Assembly: GCF_964188315.1 (NCBI RefSeq)
Contig: NC_135655.1
Coordinates: 52,514,001-52,578,000, forward strand
Length of the DNA stretch: 64,000 nucleotides
Source: Podarcis muralis
Lineage: Eukaryota
Direction of reading: 5' to 3'
Position numbers and translations under genes: made by a program. Shown one piece after another: positions 1,932-57,743 of this stretch. How positions within the stretch are numbered: position 1 is the stretch's first letter; the number at the start of each line of letters is the position of its first letter. The notes beneath the pieces were generated by a model. That model searched no databases and had not been told where the DNA came from. It saw only the letters and a program-made list of their open reading frames with translations.

Positions 1932-2447
1932 AATAATAATAATAATTTATTATTTATACCCAGCCCATCTGGCTGGGTTTTCCCAGCCACTCTGGGCGGC
2001 TTCCAACCGAATATTAAAAACAATACAGCATCAAACATTAAAAACTTCCCTAAACAGGGCCACCTTCAGCTGTCTTTTAAAAGTAAAATAGTTGCTTATT
2101 TCCTTGACATCTGATGGGAGGGTATTCCACAGGGCGGGCACCACTACAAAGAAGGCCCTCTGCCTGGTTCCCTGTAACCTCACTTCTGGGGGAGGAAGGG
2201 AAAGGAGATTGTTAGCCGCTTTGAGACTCCTGAAGGGGAGTGAAAGGCGGGATATCAAATCCAAACTCTTCTCTTCTTCTTCTTCTGGCAGCGAGGGAAC
2301 CACCAGAAGGCCCTCAGTGCTGGACCTCAGTGTCCGGGCAGAACGATGGGGGAGGAGACGCTCCTTCAGGTGTACAGGACAGAGGACATTTAGGGCTTTA
2401 CAGGTCAGCACCAACACTTTGAATTGTGCTCAGAAGTGTACCGGGAG
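1932..2447 (-). mobile_element. 5'-truncated L2-type LINE 3' end, interrupted by a SINE fragment
   Basis: ORF 2031..2417 (HLKERLLPHRSARTLRSS..LWNTLPSDVKEISNYFTFKRQLK) matches the L2 copy at 27655-28368. (AAT)n tail at 1932. Confidence 0.9.
2188..2286 (+). mobile_element. 3' fragment of Squam3B-like SINE inserted into the L2
   Basis: GGAAGGGAAAGGAGATTGTTAGCCGCTTTGAGACTCC..ATATCAAATCCAAACTC(TTC)n splits L2 sequence that is contiguous at ~27800. Same tail as the SINE at 655. Confidence 0.75.
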
Positions 2448-12210: not shown

Positions 12211-12793
12211 ATATCAGTAATGTCACTGACACGAGCTCCAGTATAATATTTCGTGCATTTCGTTTTGGTGGCGTTAAAGCATGAACATTATAATAGCACT
12301 GCTTTGTGATTGGCAAGAAAGAAGGGGAAACCAGGTGAACTGGGGTGCTCCCAGATTGTCACTATCTTTACCTGCAAATTCAGGTTGCACAGATTAAGTT
12401 GATTTGGACCTCTTGCAAAACAAACCTGCTCCCTGGTGGCTCCCTTCCCTGCAACTCAAACTTTTTGCAATAGGGAGCATGACAGGAAAACACACTGGAA
12501 AGTGTGTGATGATGCTTCATTCATGCAACACAGTGCAATCTCCCTGCAAACTTGGCGCAAGCAAATCAGTAAGAATGTTCAATAAACAGGTAACCTAGAA
12601 GCAACCATGGAGTGAAACTCGGCCACCACAACTCTATTAAGTATTTAGAGGCATTGTACATTTTTTTGCTTTAAATCAATGAACATGTAGCAGCTCTTGC
12701 TCACTAGCCTGGCTGCCCGCTACATTTGCTTCTTGAATGGCCAGCTCAAACCTGAGCCTTAGTGAAGCCCTGATTCACCAGAGTATGCAGCTG

Positions 12794-13380
12794 GGCTGCA
12801 TCAATAGGAGTATAGCATCTAGATCAAGGGAAGTAATAGTGCCACTGTATTCTGCTCTGGTCAGACCTCACCTGGAGTACTGTGTCCAGTTCTGGGCACC
12901 ACAGTTCAAGAAGGACACTGACAAACTGGAACGTGTCCAGAGGAGGGCAACCAAAATGGTCAAAGGCCTGGAAACGATGCCTTATGAGGAACGGCTAAGG
13001 GAGCTGGGCATGTTTAGCCTGGAGAAGAGGAGGTTAAGGGGTGATATGATAGCCATGTTCAAATATATAAAAGGATGTCATATAGAGGAGGGAGAAAGGT
13101 TGTTTTCTGCTGCTCCAGAGCGGAGCAATGGATCCAGACTACAAGAAAGAAGATTCCACCTAAACATTAGGAAGAACTTCCTGACAGTAAGAGCTGTTCG
13201 ACAGTGGAATTTGCTGCCAAGGAGTGTGGTGGAGTCTCCTTCTTTGGAGGTCTTTAAGCAGAGGCTTGACAACCATATGTCAGGAGTGCTCTGATGGTGT
13301 TTCCTGCTTGGCAGGGGGTTGGACTCGATGGCCCTTGTGGTCTATTCCAACTCTATGATTCTATGTTTCTATGATTCTGT
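12794..13380 (+). mobile_element. Young 5'-truncated CR1 LINE with intact RT C-terminus
   Basis: ORF 12737..13294 contains [56 protein letters not shown]; CTATGATT-type tail. Confidence 0.97.
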
Positions 13381-17128: not shown

Positions 17129-17818
17129 GGGGAAAGGCCATAGCTCAGTGGCAGAGCAGCTGCTTTACATGCAGAAGGTCCCAGGTTCAATTCCCGCATC
17201 TCCAGGTAGAGCTGGAAGAGAACACTGCCTGAAACCCTGGAGAGTGATGGTCAATCAGTGCAGATGATATTGCACTAGACCAGGGGTCTGCAACCTTTAA
17301 GACAAAAAGAGCCACTTGGACCCGTTTCCGAAGGGAGAAAAAACGGGAGCTGCAAAACCATTGCGACATTTAAAACAAATATATCCTCGTCATTATAAAA
17401 ATAACTTTTTTGTCACTTTTTTATTATTATTTCTTTGTTTGACCCCTCAGAATTACTCCTCCTCATAGAAATAAACATTAAATTAACAAGTTACCTTTTT
17501 GTGTGTGTGTGTGTTCTTCACTCCCCTTCAAAACAGTGACCAGCGTACATGCCCCTTACAATGTAGCGGGCGGGAAGGTGACGTCGGGACGGTGCGTGAC
17601 TAACCCACGCACCGACCCCATATGATGTCACAGCCAGTACAGCGCCCGCCACAGTGGGGAGTGTCGGGGCGCACAATGCGCCTTCTCCACTCACTAGTAT
17701 CCGCCCCGGAGCCGCGGCAAAGGTGTAAAAGAGCCACATGTGGCTCTGGAGCAGCGGGTTGCCGACCCCTGCGCCAGACAGATCAATGGAATGACTCTAT
17801 ATAAGGCAGCTTCTTATG
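17129..17818 (+). mobile_element. tRNA-derived SINE (Squam2-like) split by a hAT MITE
   Basis: GGCCATAGCTCAGTGGCAGAGC (A box), GGTTCAATTCCC (B box), body to 17280; resumes at 17772 with ..TATAAGGCAGCTTCTTATGT. Confidence 0.88.
17281..17771. mobile_element. hAT (Charlie-type) non-autonomous element, 491 bp
   Basis: TIR CAGGGGTCTGCAACC / GGTTGCCGACCCCTG; TSD cactagac/cgccagac (6/8 match). Confidence 0.88.
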
Positions 17819-27573: not shown

Positions 27574-28368
27574 TATTTGTACCCCACCCATCTGGCTGGG
27601 TTTCCCCAGCCACTCTGGGCGGCTTCCAACAAAGATAAAAAATACACAAAAATGTCACATATTAAAAACTTCCCTGAACAGGGCTGCCTTCAGATGTCTT
27701 CTGAATGTCAGGTAGTTGTTTATCGCTTTGACATCTGATGGGAGGGCGTTCCACAGGATGGGCGCCACTACCGAGAAGGCCCTCTGCCTGGTTCCCTGTA
27801 ACTTGGCCTCTCGCAGTGAGGGAACCACCAGAAGGCCCTCGGAGCTGGACCTCAGTGTCCGGGCAGAACGATGGGGGTGGAGACGCTCCTTCAGATATAC
27901 TGGACCGAGGCCGTTTAGGGCTTTAAAGGTCAGCACCAACACTTTGAATTGTGCTCGGAAACTTACTGGGAGCCAATGTAGGTCTTTCAAGACCAGTGTT
28001 ATATGGTCTCGGCAGCCGCTCCCAGTCACCAGTCTAGCTGCCGCATTCTGGATTAGTTGTAGTTTCCAGGTCACCTTCAAAGGTAGCCCCACGTAGAGCG
28101 CATTGCAGTAGTCCAAGCGGGAGATAACCAGAGCATGCACCACTCTGGCAAGACAGTCCGCAGGCAGATAATGTCTCAGCCTACGTACCAGATGGAGCTG
28201 GTAAACAGCTGCCCTGGATACAGATTTGACCTGTGCCTCCATGGACAGTTGTGAGTCCAAAATGACTCCCAGGCTGCGCACCTGGTCCTTCAGGGGCACA
28301 GTTACCCCATTCAGGACCAGGGAATCCTCCACACCTGCCCGCCTCCTGTCCCCCAAAAACAGTACCAC
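27530..28368 (-). pseudogene. L2 LINE 3' fragment with open RT C-terminal ORF (27655..28368, 237 aa)
   Basis: LKDQVRSLGVILDSQLSMEAQV..LVISRLDYCNALYVGLP..LQLIQNAAARLVTG..LHWLPV is the canonical L2 ORF2 end; (AAT)n tail at 27530. Confidence 0.96.
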
Positions 28369-35720: not shown

Positions 35721-36845
35721 CATAGAATCATAGAGTTGGAATAGACCACAAGGGCCATCAAGTCCAACCCCCTGCCAAGCAGGAAACACCATCAGAGCAC
35801 TCCTGACATATGGTTGCGTGTGTAGGTCCCCAGGCCACCCCTCAAATAACTTCACACATAACACGTAATTTTAGTTTTGGTTTTTGGGCACTATTTTGGC
35901 CACAACTTTATTAAAATACAAAATCAGTGAGTGGTTGTTTAGACATTGGTTATGACTATCTGTCCCCCCGCCTGGGACAGAACTGACATCCCGAGGTCCG
36001 ATCGGTAGCCAGTAGAAGAGAAAGTCAAACTTGGGGGTCATTTGAGCTAAGCGTCGGACCCACGCCGCTCACCCCAGCAGCTCCCCGAAAGCTTGCCTGC
36101 CCGGTCCTATGACAAGGATTCCCATAACAGGGATTGGGCGGCCCTGGTCCCATAACAGGGATTGGACGAAATCATGGCAAGCCCCAGGATTCCTTTAATG
36201 GAATTCCCTTCAGCGCAATAGGAGGGGCAGGCCCAGCCTGACCCCTCCACCACCAGCATATTATAACCAATGCCTAACCACAACCTTACAAGTTGTGACG
36301 AATTGCTGAGTAGTAGGTAAAAACCAAATGGCACAGCCAATCACCAAATGGCAAAATTCCTACTAGGCCCCTGCTCCAAAGCAGACGACCCCATGACAGG
36401 CAAAGCAAGGTCAACCGGAAAGAGGGTGGGCGGGCGGGTGATCCGATGCACTCTGCAAAGAGAAAGAGAAACCAGAGTGCACCAATATTTAAAGACTATG
36501 GTCCCACCCACCCAATTTGCAACATACAATTTGCCCCAGCAACCCGGTTACCCAATCATGATGCCAGGCAACAACTATTAACCTGCCTGGCAACAAGAGG
36601 CCTGGCCTGGTGGCCCACACTGCAACACATGATCTCATTTATTGGAGAACACGCTTTGTCAAGCCTCTGCTTAAAGACCTCCAAAGAAGGAGACTCCACC
36701 ACACTCCTTGGCAGCAAATTCCACTGTCGAACAGCTCTTACTGTCAGGAAGTTCTTCCTAATGTTTAGGTGGAATCTTCTTTCTTGTAGTTTGGATCCAT
36801 TGCTCTGTGTCCGCTTCTCTGGAGCAGCAGAAAACAACCTTTCTC
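35721..36845 (-). mobile_element. Young CR1 3' end, split at 35816/36655 by an insertion
   Basis: CATAGAATCATAGAGTTGG tail. GACATATGGTTG|TCAAGCCTCTGC is contiguous in the antisense of the 12794 copy. ORF 36556..36837 contains [24 protein letters not shown]. Confidence 0.95.
35821..36651 (-). mobile_element. Probable solo LTR (831 bp)
   Basis: TGT..ACA termini; minus-strand AATAAA about 85 bp from the 3' end; internal 18-bp direct repeat TCCCATAACAGGGATTGG (36120, 36148). Clearly an insertion into CR1, but there is no clean TSD. Confidence 0.6.
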
Positions 36846-41358: not shown

Positions 41359-42287
41359 TTTGATGAAGCTCACTCTTTTGCTCACTTTTAACAAACTTCA
41401 GCACCCTGCCTACTCTCCACATTTGAAAATCTCAAGGCTAGCCAATTTCCTTTAGCCAATAAATTTTTAAGGAGAGCATTTACCAAGGCATGTTAGTAAA
41501 TATTCACACCAAAACTCAGGATAACATTATTTCTGACATTTACCCCTACATTTCAAGAATCACCAAATCTCTCCAACAAATAATCCAGCATTCATTTACA
41601 TTCTACTCTGTGTTTACTTGGAAACTGAAATACTAGTTCATCTTCTTAACGATTTGTGAGCTTCCTGTAATTTTAGAATACTGCTTGTCCCCAAAGAGTG
41701 GCACTTATACATTAAATTGGGCAAGATGTGTTGCTGATTCCCTGGCAGGGGGTGGGGTGGGGGTGAGAACATACCTCCCCACTGCTAAAGTATTTTCTAG
41801 GAAGTAACTTCAATGGAACTTTCTTCTAAGTATGCCTGTGGAGTATTGCAGCTGAAGTTATTGTACACTACTGTGATGTAAATCACAGACATTTTGACAA
41901 GCTCGATCACCCACTAAATGGATCAGGTAATTGTCCTGGGGCTAGAGTGTGGAGGAATGGGCACCAGCATTTTTCTGTGTGCACCAGATTTAACAAAATG
42001 ACCTGATAGAGCTGAAGAAAGACTATCCAAGGGCATAAGAAAGAAAGCAGGGAGGGGGCAGATGTACTGGAGTAGCTGTGTTTCAGAGAAAAAACTAGGA
42101 GGGCACTGATCCAGGAATTAATGGTTACATCTCTCCCCAGATTTCAAATTTGCTGATTTCTTTGCCATTCTTATGGCCCTTAGTCATTTCCTGTACAACA
42201 CAGAATAAAGTAGCACAATATAATTGTTATACACAAATTGGAGAAGGTCCCAAGCTGCATATTTCTGTTGCATATTCAAACGCCAAA

Positions 42288-42645
42288 GGGACGCGGGTGG
42301 CGCTGTGGGTAAAACCACAGTGCCTAGGACTTGCCGATCGTATGGTTGGCGGTTCAAATCCCTGCGGCAGGGTGAGCTCCCGTCTTTCGGTCCCAGCTCC
42401 TACCCACCTAGCAGTTCAAAAGCACCCTTAAAGTGCAAGTAGATAAATAGGTACTGCTTTATAGCGGGAAGGTAAACGGCGTTCCGTGTGCTGCTCTGGC
42501 TCGCCAGATGCAGCTTGTCACACTGGCCACGTGACCCGGAAGTGTCTGCGGACAGCGCTGGCTCCCAGCCTATAGAGTGAGATGGGCGCAGAACCCCAGA
42601 GTCTGTCAAGACTGGCCCGTATGGGCAGGGGTACCTTTACCTTTT
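42288..42645 (+). mobile_element. Sauria SINE, full length
   Basis: GGGACGCGGGTGGCGCTGTGG head through GGGGTACCTTTACCTTT tail. Confidence 0.95.
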
Positions 42646-52462: not shown

Positions 52463-54007
52463 TACATGCCCCTATAGGTGAGTTGAAATATTGCATATGC
52501 GCCACAGGCGTCCTTTGTTTTCATTTCTGTTTGCTCGGTATTCCTATCTGCATTACAAAAAAATTTCTCACACTTGATGGGTATGTGTGGGCATGTGGTT
52601 CTGTGGATGGGGGGGGGGATCCCACACAGATCCCAATTCTAGAGTGTAGCTGGATGGATCAATGTGCATGTGTTCACCCATATGCCCTTTCCATCTGTTT
52701 CTGTATTAATATGCCATTATTAAATATCCAAATTTAAATACTTGTTTTGGGATATAGTTTCCCTTAAAAACTGCATTTTAACTTATACGTTTTTTATTTT
52801 GCTTGCTATATTGATTTAACCAAGAACTGTGTACAACATTCAAAGAAATGTGGAACACCATGGAGAGCTGCATTCCTATCCATCAGTTTGTCTGAGTGGT
52901 ACAGATTCAGGACAGTTGACTGCCAACTCCGTGCTTCCCCTGCCCATCCTAGTCCTGGCAAGTGGCAATACTACTGCCACCAGAAGGGCAGCTCAGTGGC
53001 AGCAGTACCACCTCATTCACTGCAACAGACTTAGGGAGTAAAGACAATGACCTCTCTCTCTCTCCCTCCCTGCCTCTCTAGGGAGTACTGGGCAGGATTT
53101 GACTAAGTTGTTGTTGTATGGAATGAAGTCTGCTCACACAACAGGACTCCCCCCCTTCCTAAATCAGCTTTGGCGAGTTGAAGGAAAGCCCAGAAAAGAT
53201 TTGTGGGGGCCATGGGGAGTCACATGGGGAGACCTCATTCAATGTACATGTACCCCACTATACTGAATTCCACAATTGTCTCTCTGTGTGTGCATCTGAA
53301 TGTGGTGCATGCACTGTGTGTTGTAAATGTCAGTTTTGTAATTATGTGAAATTTTGTTCTTAAAGAAATCAATGCAGTGCTCCCCATGGACTACTAACCT
53401 GTCAGAACCAGTCATGAGGACTGAAGAATAAGTGAGAACTAAAGGATAAACCGGGACTACAGGACAACTAAGGATACAGAAACACACCAGAGCTCAGGAA
53501 GCCCTTGTTGCTCAAGACCCCTTGTACTACTTTCTGTCCAGCAGCTAGCCTTGGTAGACAGGGCAGTCCCTGTCAAGAAGTTGCTACCTGCGGTTTCAGT
53601 GGATCACCACATGGGGCAGCTGTGAGCAGATACTGGCAGCTCCTGTGACCAAGTAGCTGGAGTGAATGAGAGCCCATCATGTGTGTTACTTCAGGGTAGA
53701 AAGGGAGCAACATAATTGTGGGATAATCCTTATTGGTGTGGGAAACCCAACAAGATCAGGAAGAATAATTAACCACAGCTCATCAGCTTCAACCACGGTG
53801 ATACGTTGCTCTGTTTACCGTATTTTTCGCACGATTGGACGCACCGGACCATAGGACGCACCTAGTTTTTTGGGGGGGAAATAAAGGAAAAAATTTTCCC
53901 CTTTATTTCCCCCCCAAAAGCAGGTCAGGGAAACCGAACCAGGTCGAGGAACAGCGGGATAGTGGCGCTGCGCCTCCCTGCTGTCCCCCAAGCTTGTGGG
54001 GCTGGCC

Positions 54008-54483
54008 GATGTCTGTCTGGCGGGCGGGGAGCTCTGCTTCAGGGCGCCCCACCCGCCGGGCGGCAGGCTGCTATCCGCAGCGTGGGGAGCCTTGTCGGGA
54101 ACTCCTGCAAGCCTCCCCACTCTGCGGATGTCTGCCTGGCGCGAGGGGCGCTCTGCTTCAGGGCGCCCCACCCGCCAGGCAGCAGGCTGCTATCCGCAGC
54201 GTGGGGAGCCTTGTCGGGAACTCCTGCAAGGCTCCCCACTCTGCGGATGTATGCCTGGCGCGAGGGGCGCTCTGCTTCAGGGCGCCCCACCCGCCAGGCA
54301 GCAGGCTGCTATCCGCAGCGTGGGGAGCCTTGTGGGGAACTCCTGCAAGGCTCCCCACTCTGCGGATGTCTGCCTGGCGCGAGGGGCGCTCTGCTTCAGG
54401 GCGCCCCACCCGCCAGGCAGCAGGCTGCTATCCGCAGCGTGGGGAGCCCTGTGGGGAATTCCTGCAAGGCTCCCCATGCTGCG
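54008..54483. repeat. Tandem array A: 4 x 119 bp
   Basis: Unit starts (GATGT.TG.CTGGCG) at 54008, 54127, 54246 and 54365. Confidence 0.97.
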
Positions 54484-54567
54484 GGTGTGTTCCCGAAGCG
54501 CCTGGAGCTCTGCTTTCAGGGCGCCTGGCGCTCCGGGAAGCAGGCTGAGCGGAGCGCTAATCCCGAA

Positions 54568-54975
54568 GCCCCAAGCTTCGGGATTAGCGCGGCGCTTCGC
54601 TAGCCCTGGGAGAGCCACGCAACGTCGCGGGGCTCTCCCAGGGCTAGCGAGACCTTGCCGGCACCCAGAAGCTTGGGGCGCGCTGAGCTCCACGCGCCCC
54701 AAGCTTCGGGATTAGCGCGGCGCTTCGCTAGCCCTGGGAGAGCCACGCAACGTCGCGGGGCTCTCCCAGGGCTAGCGAGACCTTGCCGGCACCCAGAAGC
54801 TTGGGGCGCGCTGAGCTCCACGCGCCCCAAGCTTCGGGATTAGCGCGGCGCTTCGCTAGCCCTAGGAGAGCCACGCAACGTCGCGGGGCTCTCCCAGGGC
54901 TAGCGAGACCTTGCCGGCACCCAGAAGCTTGGGGCGCGCTGTGGCACGCCCCAAGCTTCTGGATTAGCGCAGCGG
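54568..54975. repeat. Tandem array B: 3 x 128 bp plus a partial unit
   Basis: GCCCCAAGCTT at 54568, 54696, 54824 and 54948. Confidence 0.97.
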
Positions 54976-55928
54976 TCCGCTAGCCGTGGGAGAGCTGGGT
55001 CTCCCACGGCTAGCGGATAGCTTCCTGAAGCCTGGAGAGCGAGAGGGGTCGGTGCGCACCGACCCCTCTCACTCTCCAGGCTTCAGCGAAAGCCTGCATT
55101 CGCTCCATAGGACGCACACACATTTTCCCTTGCTTTTTGGGAGGGAAAAAGTGCGTCCTATGGTGCGAAAAATACGGTATATACCTCGTGCCTGTAGAAT
55201 CAGGTCTATTGGCCAGGCTGGCTGGGTCCTGATATGTTTTTTCCATCCCACTGCTTACGGTAGTAAACACATGTGCAAATGCCTTTGCATTTAAGGCATA
55301 TTTGCAGATCTTCATGCGCAGCCCATAAAATGTGGCATGGTGCAGGGTGGGGAGATAAGCTTTCTGCAGTATTCTCAGAAACTTCTGTCTAATGTCTGGT
55401 TGCAGATATACTTGGCAATATGAGTGTAATGGGGAAGTGTATCAGAAAGGCCCTTACTCCCCTTTCCAACTATGGACACCCTGTCATATTAATTGCATCC
55501 ATACCCTACGAGGCTGATCTCAGAGATGTTCACAGGTGCATCCTTTCTAAGAGCACACAGTGGAGGCACTCTAAAGAAATCAGGACCAGATGTGGAGTGG
55601 CAGGCGCTTCCTCCACAGGAAATGTGCCCTCAGGTACAGCCCAGGCAAGGGAAGCCCAGGACTGTTTAGAAAAGGATGAGCCAAGATGCCTGTGTCATGT
55701 ATACCTTTCTTGGTTATCACTCTTCCCCATTGCTCTTCCGCACTCTGCTTCTGCATTCCTTCAGTTTAGCCTTCTCAAAGCCTTTGCTATTCAGATCACT
55801 TTCTTTCCTTGGTAAGATAATGCAATTCCCTCATTGGTGTGATCAACCTACTTCATATCTGCCCCATTTTTGTCCCTTATGTGTCAAGGTATCTTGGTGG
55901 TGGTAACAGTCACTAGCACAGTGGTGTA

Positions 55929-56278
55929 AAGGTAAAGGGACCCCTGACCATTAGGTCCAGTCGTGACCGACTCTGGGGTTGCGGCACTCATCTCGCTTTA
56001 TTGGCCAAGGGAGCCAGCATACAGCTTCCAGGTCATGTGGCCAGCATGACTAAGCCGCTTCTGGCGAACCAGAGCAGCACACGGAAACACCGTTTACCTT
56101 CCCGCTGGAGCGGTACCTATTTATCTACTTGCACTTTGACGTGCTTTCGAACTGCTAGGCTGGCAGGAGCTGGGACCGAGCAATGGGAGCTCACCCCATC
56201 ACGGGGATTCGAACCGCCTACCTTCTGATCGGCAAGTCCTAGGCTCTGTGGTTTAACCCACAGCGGCATCCACGTCCC
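55929..56278 (-). mobile_element. Sauria SINE, full length
   Basis: Canonical sequence; 14-bp TSD AGCACAGTGGTGTA (55915, 56280). Confidence 0.97.
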
Positions 56279-57743
56279 GAGCACAGTGGTGTAGGTGAGA
56301 CTAAATGCCTTTCCTAGCATCCCAGTGCCGTGTGGCTGCCAGTTACTGATGGAGGGGGCAGACAAGGCTCCACTGAGACACTCACACCATTCCAAGCTCC
56401 CTGCTGCCTTGCCCCCATCTCTCCTGGTAACTAGCAGTGACACACACAGCACTGAGAAGCCAGGGGAGCAATGCCGCCCCACCCACTCCACCATGCCAGC
56501 TACTGCTTCGTGACAGCTTTGGTAGGTGGAATAGGGCAGTGAAGATTTTTCTGCTGCTTAGATTTTGAATTTCTCCACTGCTTGATTTTGGACCCTGGGC
56601 AGAGGAGAAAGATCAGGCTTTAGAAAACTTTCTTCTTTTCTGGGCCCATGCAAGTTTTTCTTGAAGCTCAAGCTGAAATAAGTTCCCGGTATCCTAGCAT
56701 GCTGCAGGGAAGCTAGAACGCTAGTGCTAGAATGGGGAACTGCATGTGCTTCAAGTGATGCCCTAAGGCAGGAGTAGCCAATATGGTGCCCTCATGGGCG
56801 TAGCCAGGATTTTTGTTTAGGAGGGCACTCAAGATGTGGCTGGACTCCAGTTCCCACCATCTCTCATGCCAACTGGGCCTGAAGGGAGTTGGAAGCCAAC
56901 AACACATGAAGGGCGCCACATTTGTTACCCCTATATTAAAGGAGAGGCAGAAGCCCCAAGAGGGCAGCTAAACACATCTCTTGAGAAGGATATGGGAGAA
57001 GCAGAATGAGAAACTGGGCATGCATAGAAGCGATGTGTCAGCATGAGCCAGACTTTCCTCAGAGAGGTGCATATAGCAAACAGGCTGCTAGAAGTGTAAG
57101 CATAGGCAGCACTGGGGAGCCACATACACAAAATTGTTCACCGCACATACAGAAAAGTTTGCAGACATTTCCCCCCCAAGTTCATCAAGATCCAAAGAAA
57201 ATGAATGCACATCTTCAAAGGATCATCAGGTGAGGAGGAGAGCTTTTACACTGGCATGCAGAGACCAGAAGAAGTTACAATTTCCTTAGAAACAAAGGGA
57301 AGGGAAGACCAATTCGATGATAGCGTACAGGTAGGTGTGGCCTGTGGTTCAAAAACTCAAGAGTAAGCCTAGCAGGAATGTAAGCAGAAGTTACAGAGTG
57401 ATCAAACTGATGGTTAAACAGCAGAGTCTGCAGTGTCTTAGAAATATGGTATATTCACACATATTTACATCTTAATCCTTCAATGGAGGGAGTGCACAAC
57501 ATTATACCCAAAGAGTATCGTGCTCCTCTTATAGCTTCAGCAGGCTTGGGTCCAACACAACAGCCAGTCGTGGTCCCTGGTTTCTGAGTGCAGCAGCTCC
57601 CATCTACTTCCTCCTTTTTCCCATCAGCCTTTGCAGAAAACAATTCCTCTCCTTCCACTTCTAGCATCCCCCCTGTCACCCTGGCAACCTCCATTTCAAA
57701 AGCTTCCTCCTTTTTTCTGTGGTTACATCATGCCCTCTGTAAT

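What the first reader, a model, noticed from the sequence alone, without database searches (positions are those of the whole stretch)
53818..55177. 1.36-kb 'all-hairpin' Tc2/pogo MITE: a transposon shell filled with serial near-perfect stem-loops
Seen: between CCGTA-type TIRs and a TA duplication, almost every segment is a local inverted repeat. These are a 20-bp perfect stem at 53868-53887/53900-53919, two stems in each 119-bp unit (x4), a 16-bp perfect stem at 54554-54590, 20-bp and 15-bp perfect stems in each 128-bp unit (x3), a hairpin at ~54976-55017, a 62-bp palindrome with one mismatch at 55025-55086, and a terminal hairpin at 55105-55163. That is roughly 18 stems. Known: CCGTA termini with TA TSDs mark Tc2/pogo-type elements such as MER104/Kanga, whose MITEs are usually a few hundred bp. 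Inference: this is a recently active foldback family that could extrude cruciforms, stall replication, or yield structured RNA or small RNAs from intronic transcripts. I cannot tell whether it is already catalogued.
Basis: partly seen in the sequence, partly recalled or inferred. Interest (0 to 1): 0.72.

Follow-up and report, generated by a model that had tools for sequence, protein, structure and literature searches.

The report
Hairpin-packed Passer transposon copy in lizard
This is a real, young and still polymorphic copy of a very abundant non-coding cut-and-paste transposon (Passer family, pogo superfamily) whose 1.2-kb interior is built of GC-rich palindromic repeat units. It is a neat example of a known kind of repeat-carrying transposon, and nothing shows it to be a special RNA or regulatory device.

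Summary
The 1,360-bp element at 53818-55177 has 27-bp CCGTA-type terminal inverted repeats (TIRs) and TA on both sides. It carries two tandem arrays (119 bp x4.3, 128 bp x3.4) and about 18 strong hairpins. Folding z-scores are -18 and -30, and 13 of the window's 15 perfect stems of 12 bp or more lie inside it.

An individual of the same species carries the exact empty site with a single TA, so the insertion is young and polymorphic. Summed word depth in three DNA runs is about 10^4 times the flank depth at the ends, 10^3 times on the 119-bp units and 10^2-10^3 times on the 128-bp units. It is therefore one copy of a very large family.

Both ends are homologous to the ends of Passer transposons (pogo superfamily, DD35D transposase). 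This includes published lacertid, Anolis and Varanus elements and a transposase-bearing relative fetched here.

The hairpin interior is lineage-specific cargo. Related fish MITEs fold only weakly (z -2 to -4). It probably arose by inverted duplication or template switching plus array slippage.

No RNA reads cover the flanks of this locus, and no Rfam family is matched.

The scan had already noted at least nine such elements elsewhere in this genome. This is a new member of a known kind, of modest interest.

The parts
53816..53817 (.). Left TA of the target-site duplication
   Evidence: The empty allele (X3 record 9) joins 53815 directly to 55178 and keeps one TA.
53818..53844 (+). Left 27-bp terminal inverted repeat (CCGTA terminus plus GGACGCAC motif)
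   Evidence: (I20). It aligns to the ends of Passer relatives.
53845..53862 (+). Second, directly adjacent copy of the ATAGGACGCAC motif (the 'tandem-motif' end). Presumed transposase-binding site.
   Evidence: The same two-motif arrangement occurs in L012, L004, L002 and L006 and in the published Anolis, Vipera and Varanus Passer ends. Binding is inferred.
53818..53895 (+). Left 'chassis': the stretch homologous to the end of autonomous PasserC-lizard elements. It includes the 5' arm of the first hairpin.
   Evidence: 20-mer with 1 mismatch at 53850-69. By-eye comparison with the Anolis, Zootoca and Varanus rows of Table S1 in PMC9976928.
53868..53919 (.). Hairpin with a 20-bp perfect stem. 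The 5' arm is ancestral and the 3' arm is a new perfect inverted copy.
   Evidence: 20/20. The published autonomous ends continue A-rich without the inverted copy.
54008..54525 (.). Array A: 119-bp unit x4.3, each unit with two hairpins (about 51 nt and about 75 nt)
   Evidence: Depth is about 10^3 times the flank depth.
54548..54596 (.). Junction hairpin with a 16-bp perfect stem. Its 3' arm is the start of the first B unit and its 5' arm is the inverted copy of that.
   Evidence: Module comparison Hmid against B_out gives z = 15.6.
54568..54995 (.). Array B: 128-bp quasi-palindromic unit x3.4, with a 20-bp perfect inner stem and a 15-bp stem between neighbouring units
   Evidence: (I1-I3, I10, I11). 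Depth is about 200-900 times the flank depth.
54971..55022 (.). Variant B-type hairpin with an 18-bp perfect stem. It differs from the B inner stem by a mirrored substitution on the two arms, and by eye a matching extra base on each arm.
   Evidence: pair 59/94, CG to GC, changed on both sides.
55025..55086 (.). 62-bp palindrome with one mismatch and no spacer
   Evidence: (I18). Its bin is as deep as the termini.
55092..55177 (-). Right 'chassis', the hairpin end: outer TIR 55151-55177, a spacer of about 33 nt, and an inner inverted copy of the motif at 55105-55117. It is homologous to the transposase-proximal (5') end of Passer elements.
   Evidence: alignment with L012, L002, L010 and L013. 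(P. muralis Passer, about 85% over 86 nt by eye). (exact 18-mer at 55092-55109). Many family copies diverge exactly at 55091 (loose ends).
55178..55179 (.). Right TA of the target-site duplication

Best explanation
The element is a non-autonomous derivative of a Passer transposon (pogo superfamily, DD35D transposase). Only about 80 bp at each end remain of the ancestral element. Those ends carry the CCGTA termini and three to four copies of the ATA(A/G)GACGCAC motif, two in tandem at the left and one outer plus one inverted inner copy at the right.

A Passer transposase made elsewhere in the genome would recognise these ends, cut the element out and paste it into a TA. This copy inserted recently enough that the species still carries the unoccupied site.

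The 1.2 kb between the ends is non-coding cargo made of four or five families of GC-rich palindromic modules, two of which have been amplified into short tandem arrays. The modules most likely arise and stay near-perfect through DNA-level processes. These are inverted duplication or intramolecular template switching during replication or gap repair, which copies one arm onto the other, and slippage or unequal exchange, which expands the arrays. The modules spread by hitch-hiking on the mobile ends.

Shown: the structure, the TA duplication, the empty site, the high copy number, and the end homology to transposase-bearing Passer elements. Inferred: mobilisation in trans, the role of the motifs as binding sites, and the template-switch origin of the hairpins.
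For: - Structure and statistics.
- Precise empty site: X3 contig record 9 (2,174 nt, depth 46.3) runs 53300-53815 and then 55178-55700 with adjacent record positions 1401/1402. X1 record 1 runs from the flank into the TIR to 53841 with no differences.
- Copy number: flank depths are 84, 46 and 20. The ends reach 0.2-4.1 million, array A 24,000-690,000 and array B 10,000-46,000. X3 lacks this insertion yet holds 76% of the sampled 31-mers.
- Family assignment: 13 metagenome loci carry TA|CCGTATTTTTCGGACTATAAGGCGCAC ends.
- L012 has both ends 1,758 bp apart, enclosing HTH_Tnp_Tc5 (7e-13) and DDE_1 (1e-23). [quoted passage not shown]
- The asymmetric end architecture is conserved.
- Table S1 of PMC9976928 lists CCGTA/CCGTA termini and TA/TA for Passer, including Anolis, Zootoca, Podarcis, Varanus and Vipera. 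An exact 18-mer and a 20-mer with one mismatch from those ends match the window.
- The cargo is lineage-specific. Related 580-bp MITEs fold with z = -3.6 and -2.3.
- There are no binding motifs inside the arrays.
- The arms change together: 4 pairs in the A hairpin and 1 in the B hairpin changed on both sides. The 3' arm of the 20-bp stem is absent from the autonomous ends.
- Template switching is a documented way to create and perfect hairpins (PMC8794818).
Against: - No autonomous partner was recovered from this genome itself. The P. muralis autonomous copy has a somewhat different motif (ATAACACGCA), so the actual mobilising transposase is not identified.
- The summed word depth is, by the tool's own warning, not a strict copy number.
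- The empty site rests on one contig in one run. X4 was ambiguous.
- The both-sided changes come from only 4-5 paralogous units. They cannot separate DNA-level symmetrisation from selection on a hairpin.
- High CpG content could also reflect protection from methylation and not just youth.
Confidence: 0.85

Rival explanations
1. The hairpin modules are functional at the RNA level. The element, or the family, would be a source of structured RNA, miRNA-like precursors or endogenous small RNAs processed from host transcripts.
For: - There are many 50-75-nt near-perfect hairpins.
- There are weak, sub-threshold resemblances to generic miRNA-precursor models.
- Family sequences appear in an RNA run. 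They may also appear in small runs that the tool only guessed to be RNA.
Against: - RNA depth on both flanks of this locus is zero.
- 96% of RNA reads on the element run on into unlike sequence, so they come from other copies. Both strands are represented equally.
- All Rfam hits are far below gathering score and occur on both strands.
- The palindromes are symmetric at the DNA level.
- No small-RNA data were available.
Confidence: 0.07
2. Pack-MITE-like capture: the ends enclose a captured host CpG island or promoter fragment.
For: The interior has GC 69% and CpG observed/expected 0.74 over 1.2 kb, which is CpG-island-like by composition. Other scan notes proposed cargo capture for similar elements.
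Against: - The interior is repeated 10^2-10^3-fold relative to the flanks.
- It consists of tandem palindromic units.
- There is no coding or RNA-gene similarity.
- The published autonomous P. muralis Passer copy already carries GC-rich subterminal tandem repeats.
Confidence: 0.04
3. The hairpins are selected cis-acting parts of the transposon. They might be extra protein-binding or synapsis sites, or structures that favour excision or gap repair, which would explain why they stay perfect.
For: The terminal hairpin (outer motif plus inverted inner motif) is conserved from fish to lizard, and its two copies covary. The 62-bp palindrome bin is as deep as the termini.
Against: - Interior modules lack the end motif.
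- Many family copies carry other interiors, or short forms that join the left end to the right end directly (joints and loose ends).
- Fish relatives lack such cargo.
Confidence: 0.04

Closest known systems
Passer (PS) transposons, pogo superfamily, in particular the 'PasserC-lizards' elements of Anolis, Zootoca, Podarcis and Varanus (Gao et al. 2020, PMC7386202; Wang et al. 2023, PMC9976928, Table S1)
   Same: - TA target duplication, CCGTA termini and TIRs shorter than 30 bp.
- The same repeated ATA(A/G)GACGCAC-type motif.
- The same asymmetric ends: tandem motifs at one end, and motif, spacer and inverted motif at the other.
- About 85% identity over 86 nt to the P. muralis 5' end and about 80% to the Anolis end (read by eye). 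The short-pattern matches were confirmed.
- The P. muralis copy also has GC-rich subterminal tandem repeats.
   Different: - There is no transposase gene.
- The interior is replaced by 1.2 kb of palindromic modules.
- Copy number is orders of magnitude above the 4-59 copies listed for autonomous Passer in lizards.
- The paper does not mention non-autonomous derivatives or tandem repeats.
Tandem-repeat-containing MITEs such as DTC84 of the clam Donax trunculus (PMC3879986) and the Tetris element of Drosophila virilis (PMC4079207). Also the Xenopus Xstir/Xmix system (from my own memory, not checked here).
   Same: Short mobile ends enclose a short array of satellite-like units. The families are high-copy and can disperse and seed tandem repeats.
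   Different: - Here there are two different arrays plus several single modules.
- Almost every unit is itself a near-perfect GC-rich palindrome.
- The host is an amniote.
- The superfamily is assigned (Passer/pogo).
- Tetris is a true foldback element with long TIRs, which this element is not.
Template-switch (quasi-palindrome) mutation as a generator and maintainer of hairpins (Monttinen and Loytynoja 2022, PMC8794818)
   Same: Perfect stems with mirrored changes on both arms. One ancestral arm plus a newly made inverted copy (20-bp stem at 53868-53919).
   Different: That work concerns RNA genes and single events inferred on phylogenies. Here the process is only inferred from paralogous modules within one element.

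Membership tests
Passer family (pogo superfamily), non-autonomous derivative | TA target-site duplication | tested here: met
   TA lies on both sides. The empty allele retains a single TA (X3 record 9).
Passer family (pogo superfamily), non-autonomous derivative | Short TIRs (under 30 bp) with CCGTA termini | tested here: met
   25/27 TIR beginning CCGTA. CCGTA/CCGTA is listed for Passer across taxa in PMC9976928 Table S1.
Passer family (pogo superfamily), non-autonomous derivative | Ends homologous to those of an element that encodes a DD35D transposase with BrkDBD/HTH_Tnp_Tc5 and DDE_1 domains | tested here: met
   L012 has both ends, HTH_Tnp_Tc5 and DDE_1, and a spacing of 35. Relatives carry PF09607, PF03221 and PF03184. 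Published lizard ends match.
Passer family (pogo superfamily), non-autonomous derivative | Own transposase gene | tested here: not met
   The only long open frames are stop-free runs through the GC-rich repeats. There is no transposase-like sequence. The element is therefore a non-autonomous derivative and not an autonomous member.
Passer family (pogo superfamily), non-autonomous derivative | A matching autonomous partner in the same genome | not testable with these tools
   Only this 64-kb window of the genome is held. The strict TIR pattern found nothing in metagenome contigs.
MITE (miniature inverted-repeat transposable element) | TIRs, a target-site duplication, no coding capacity and high copy number | tested here: met
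MITE (miniature inverted-repeat transposable element) | Small size (usually below about 800 bp) | tested here: not met
   This copy is 1,360 bp. Short forms that join the left end to the right end exist in the family (joints such as 53864 to 55072 and 53918 to 55157).
Tandem-repeat-containing MITE | A central tandem array between TIR-bearing flanks | tested here: met
   Two arrays.
Tandem-repeat-containing MITE | Repeat number varies between copies | tested here: inconclusive
   Contigs that skip 300-425 bp within array A were seen. The skips are not clean multiples of 119 and rest on short anchors.
Foldback (FB-like) element | Long terminal inverted repeats that make up most of the element | tested here: not met
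   Only 27-29 nt at the termini pair with each other. All other inverted repeats are local.
Pack-MITE / captured host fragment | An interior derived from a single-copy host gene or promoter | tested here: not met
   The interior is 10^2-10^3 times deeper than the flanks and is built of tandem palindromes.
Known structured RNA or miRNA family | A match at Rfam gathering score, and transcription of the locus | tested here: not met
   No match at gathering score. Only sub-threshold generic hairpin hits on both strands. RNA depth on the flanks is zero in run X23 (one run, 12% of it read).

The most novel reading that the evidence does not exclude
A Passer-derived element family is currently active in an amniote and works as a genome-wide breeder of self-perfecting GC-rich palindromes. 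New hairpin modules would be born by template switching inside the element, amplified into arrays, and dispersed to around 10^4 TA sites. This would create thousands of polymorphic, cruciform-prone, CpG-island-like loci that could seed satellites, fragile sites or small-RNA loci.
Probability: 0.25. Interest if true: 0.5.

Novelty: new member of a known kind. Interest (0 to 1): 0.3.

Why it matters
Active cut-and-paste transposons are uncommon in amniotes. A polymorphic insertion of a family with roughly 10^4-fold depth indicates recent Passer activity in this lizard.

The family also gives a compact natural series of palindromic modules. The birth and perfecting of hairpins, and the step from transposon to tandem repeat, can be followed in it.

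For annotation the practical point is simpler. These CpG-rich, hairpin-dense blocks are transposon cargo and should not be read as promoters, CpG islands or RNA genes.

Tried and rejected
- The strict lizard TIR pattern found 0 hits in metagenome contigs. A loosened pattern was needed.
- A literal TIR string searched in papers gave only irrelevant primer hits.
- Literature searches for lizard, MITE, Tc2 or Podarcis gave nothing specific.
- A look-up of earlier findings by sequence was blank.
- A P. muralis subterminal repeat motif was not found in the window. The A and B arrays are therefore not simply that repeat.
- Rfam at gathering score and at E up to 1 gave only generic sub-threshold hairpin hits.
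- The bacterial-type promoter and terminator scan found nothing and does not apply to a eukaryote in any case.
- The first whole-element shuffle script timed out. It was replaced by strand folding on the two halves.
- The host gene, and whether the site is intronic, was not determined. The long ORFs of the window look like LINE and SINE remnants.
- The large HMMER search, structure prediction and the protein atlas were not used, because Pfam and the word search settled the transposase family.
None of the fetched contigs looked human (their relatives are teleost and other animal proteins).
- The N run near 45.8 kb was left alone.
- No consensus of the element was built. Only the short TIR consensus printed by read laying is quoted.
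Full report
**Observation.** The sequence at 53818-55177 is exactly as described.

The termini are inverted repeats: 25 of 27 positions match, or 27 of 29 with the flanking TA. TA stands on both sides.

Tandem Repeats Finder reports a 119-bp unit x4.3 at 54008-54525 and a 128-bp unit x3.4 at 54568-54995.

- As RNA the whole element folds to -1036 kcal/mol with 81% of bases paired. It forms 22 hairpins, 17 of them with 18 or more pairs.
- As single-stranded DNA the two halves have z-scores of -18.0 and -29.8 against dinucleotide-preserving shuffles.
- Thirteen of the fifteen perfect stems of 12 bp or more in the 64-kb window lie in this 2% of it.
- The element has 66% GC and a CpG observed/expected ratio of 0.77. 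The window has 43% and 0.28.

**It is a transposon, and a young one.** Contigs of three DNA runs and reads of one RNA run of the same species label were laid on 53300-55700.

In run X3 a 2,174-nt contig (depth 46.3, equal to the flank depth) covers 53300-53815 and continues without a single extra letter at 55178. That is the unoccupied site with one TA.

In run X1 a contig runs from the left flank across the TA into the repeat as far as 53841 with no differences. X1 differs from the window at three flank positions, so it is another individual with the filled allele. X4 could not be called.

The flanks of the X3 haplotype differ from the window by 7 substitutions and a 16-bp insertion in about 1 kb. 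This looks like ordinary within-species variation.

A clean TA with no footprint points to an insertion that is still polymorphic.

**It is one copy of a very large family.** Flank depths are about 84, 46 and 20 in X1, X3 and X4. Depths over the element are far higher:

| Part | Summed word depth |
|---|---|
| Terminal bins | 0.2 to 4.1 million |
| 119-bp array | 24,000 to 690,000 |
| 128-bp array | 10,000 to 46,000 |

The tool warns that summed word depth is not a copy number. Even so, the contrast of two to four orders of magnitude in three runs from three studies is unambiguous.

X3 lacks this insertion yet still holds 76% of the sampled 31-mers of the stretch. Near-identical copies must therefore exist elsewhere in that genome.

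Loose ends show that many copies carry a slightly different TIR (CCGTATTTTTCGCTCTATAAGACGCAC) and another interior abutting 55091. Joints show short forms in which the left end meets the right end directly.

The scan's own notes list at least nine similar elements on other pieces of this genome, one of them with a 119-bp hairpin array. These are leads and not evidence, but they agree with the depth data.

**Family assignment.** An exact-match scan of public metagenome contigs with the strict lizard TIR found nothing.

A loosened pattern found 13 loci whose elements all begin TA|CCGTATTTTTCGGACTATAAGGCGCAC. Most are 570-590-bp MITEs.

In L012 the two ends lie 1,758 bp apart. They enclose, in two overlapping frames with one frameshift and one stop, an HTH_Tnp_Tc5 domain (E 7e-13) and a DDE_1 domain (E 1e-23). 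[quoted passage not shown]

Its relatives are mostly teleost proteins. A salamander and a thrush also appear. The proteins are named 'pogo transposable element with KRAB domain-like' and often carry the Brinker DNA-binding domain.

This combination is the published definition of the Passer family of the pogo superfamily (PMC7386202, PMC9976928): DD35D, BrkDBD plus HTH_Tnp_Tc5, TIRs shorter than 30 bp, TA duplication, and an overall length of 1.6-4 kb.

The end architecture is shared in detail. One end has the terminal motif followed directly by a second copy, which is the window's left end.

Table S1 of PMC9976928 lists CCGTA/CCGTA termini and TA/TA for Passer in many phyla, and gives elements from Anolis, Zootoca, Podarcis, Lacerta, Varanus and snakes.

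- Read by eye, the first 86 nt of the Podarcis muralis element are about 85% identical to the reverse complement of 55092-55177. An 18-mer from it matches exactly at 55092-55109.
- The Anolis, Vipera, Varanus and Zootoca ends match the window's left end through about 53895. A 20-mer matches with one mismatch at 53850-53869.

In current nomenclature the element is a Passer derivative. I did not test the stated relation to human MER104/Kanga.

**What the interior is.** Homology to autonomous Passer ends stops at about 53895 and 55092. The 1.2 kb between these points is cargo.

It is not a general property of this TIR lineage. Two related fish MITEs fold with z of only -3.6 and -2.3, mostly through their TIRs. 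The published P. muralis autonomous copy, however, already has GC-rich tandem repeats next to its end.

The end motif does not occur inside the arrays.

The modules fall into a few related groups:

- A hairpin 1 with the partial fifth A unit (z = 6.4).
- The junction hairpin with the B outer stem (z = 15.6).
- The B inner stem with its variant at 54971-55022 (z = 5.9).

Where related modules differ, the two arms change together. Four pairs in the A hairpin and one in the B hairpin changed on both sides. By eye, the variant B stem also has a matching extra base on each arm.

In the first hairpin, the 5' arm corresponds to sequence present in the autonomous elements. The perfectly complementary 3' arm is absent from them.

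With four or five paralogues this is only suggestive. It is, however, what inverted duplication or intramolecular template switching produces, and that is a documented way of creating and perfecting hairpins (PMC8794818). Array growth by slippage or unequal exchange explains the 93-95% similar units.

Because the palindromes read almost the same on both strands, a DNA-level process is the more economical explanation than selection on an RNA.

**RNA.** One RNA-seq run was examined, with 12% of it read. Depth is zero on both flanks, apart from a trace (0.84) at the short repeat at 53462-53542.

The 1,324 reads on the element are mostly under 95% alike. Of them, 96% continue into unlike sequence, and they lie equally on both strands. 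They therefore come from other copies embedded in other transcripts.

Rfam gives nothing at gathering score in the window except a weak tRNA-like hit elsewhere. In the element it gives only sub-threshold hits to assorted miRNA-precursor models on both strands, which is what any hairpin gives.

A small-RNA role for the family is not excluded, but nothing supports it. Cruciform formation and replication stalling are plausible for perfect GC-rich palindromes but could not be tested.

**Comparison and verdict.** The element works like, and by its ends belongs to, the Passer family as a non-autonomous derivative.

- It is too long to be a MITE in the strict sense.
- It is not a foldback element.
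- It is of the same kind as the tandem-repeat-containing MITEs described in clams and Drosophila (PMC3879986, PMC4079207).

What is particular here is the density and perfection of the palindromic modules, the very high copy number in an amniote, and the insertion polymorphism.

I could not check Dfam or Repbase, find the autonomous partner in this genome, or determine the host gene.

I rate it a new member of a known kind, with modest interest.

Noticed in passing
window 55082-55162 versus 53786-53866: The right (hairpin) end of the family is about four times deeper than the left end in all three DNA runs. Other subfamilies or solo ends probably share the right end.
   Followed up: no
window 54029-54514: Depth of the 119-bp units relative to the flanks differs 4-10-fold between runs (about 6,000-8,000x in X1, 500-2,000x in X3, 1,400-3,400x in X4). 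This may be sequencing bias on GC-rich hairpins or a real difference in copy number.
   Followed up: no
window 53568-53575: Runs X3 and X4 carry 16 extra letters here compared with the window. This is an indel polymorphism on the haplotype that, in X3, lacks the transposon.
   Followed up: no
window 53462-53542: A short stretch about 8-12 times deeper than its surroundings in three DNA runs. It is a separate low-copy repeat.
   Followed up: no
window 27655-28368 (-), 12737-13294 (+), 2031-2417 (-), 36556-36837 (-): Open frames share the same C-terminal peptide motifs. They look like tails of a LINE reverse-transcriptase family present in several copies.
   Followed up: no
window 42150-42431 (+) and 56117-56494 (-); also 17141-17197: Two frames translate to the same 'WVKPQ.LGLAD..VGGSNP' string, so a dispersed short repeat (SINE-like) is present twice. 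A weak tRNA-like Rfam hit (31.7 bits) at 17141-17197 may be a SINE head.
   Followed up: no
L012:442-2199; L010: A nearly intact Passer element (one frameshift, one stop) and a second truncated one sit in public metagenome contigs. These are evidently animal (probably fish) DNA within metagenome assemblies. L009 also carries a TANGO2 gene.
   Followed up: partly
TIR motif: window 53836-53844 and 55105-55117/55151-55163; L012 ends; P. muralis row of Table S1 in PMC9976928: The terminal motif and its inner inverted copy differ between lineages but always match each other (fish ATAAGGCGCAC, P. muralis ATAACACGCA, this element ATAGGACGCAC). This is expected if both copies are bound by a co-evolving transposase.
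   Followed up: partly
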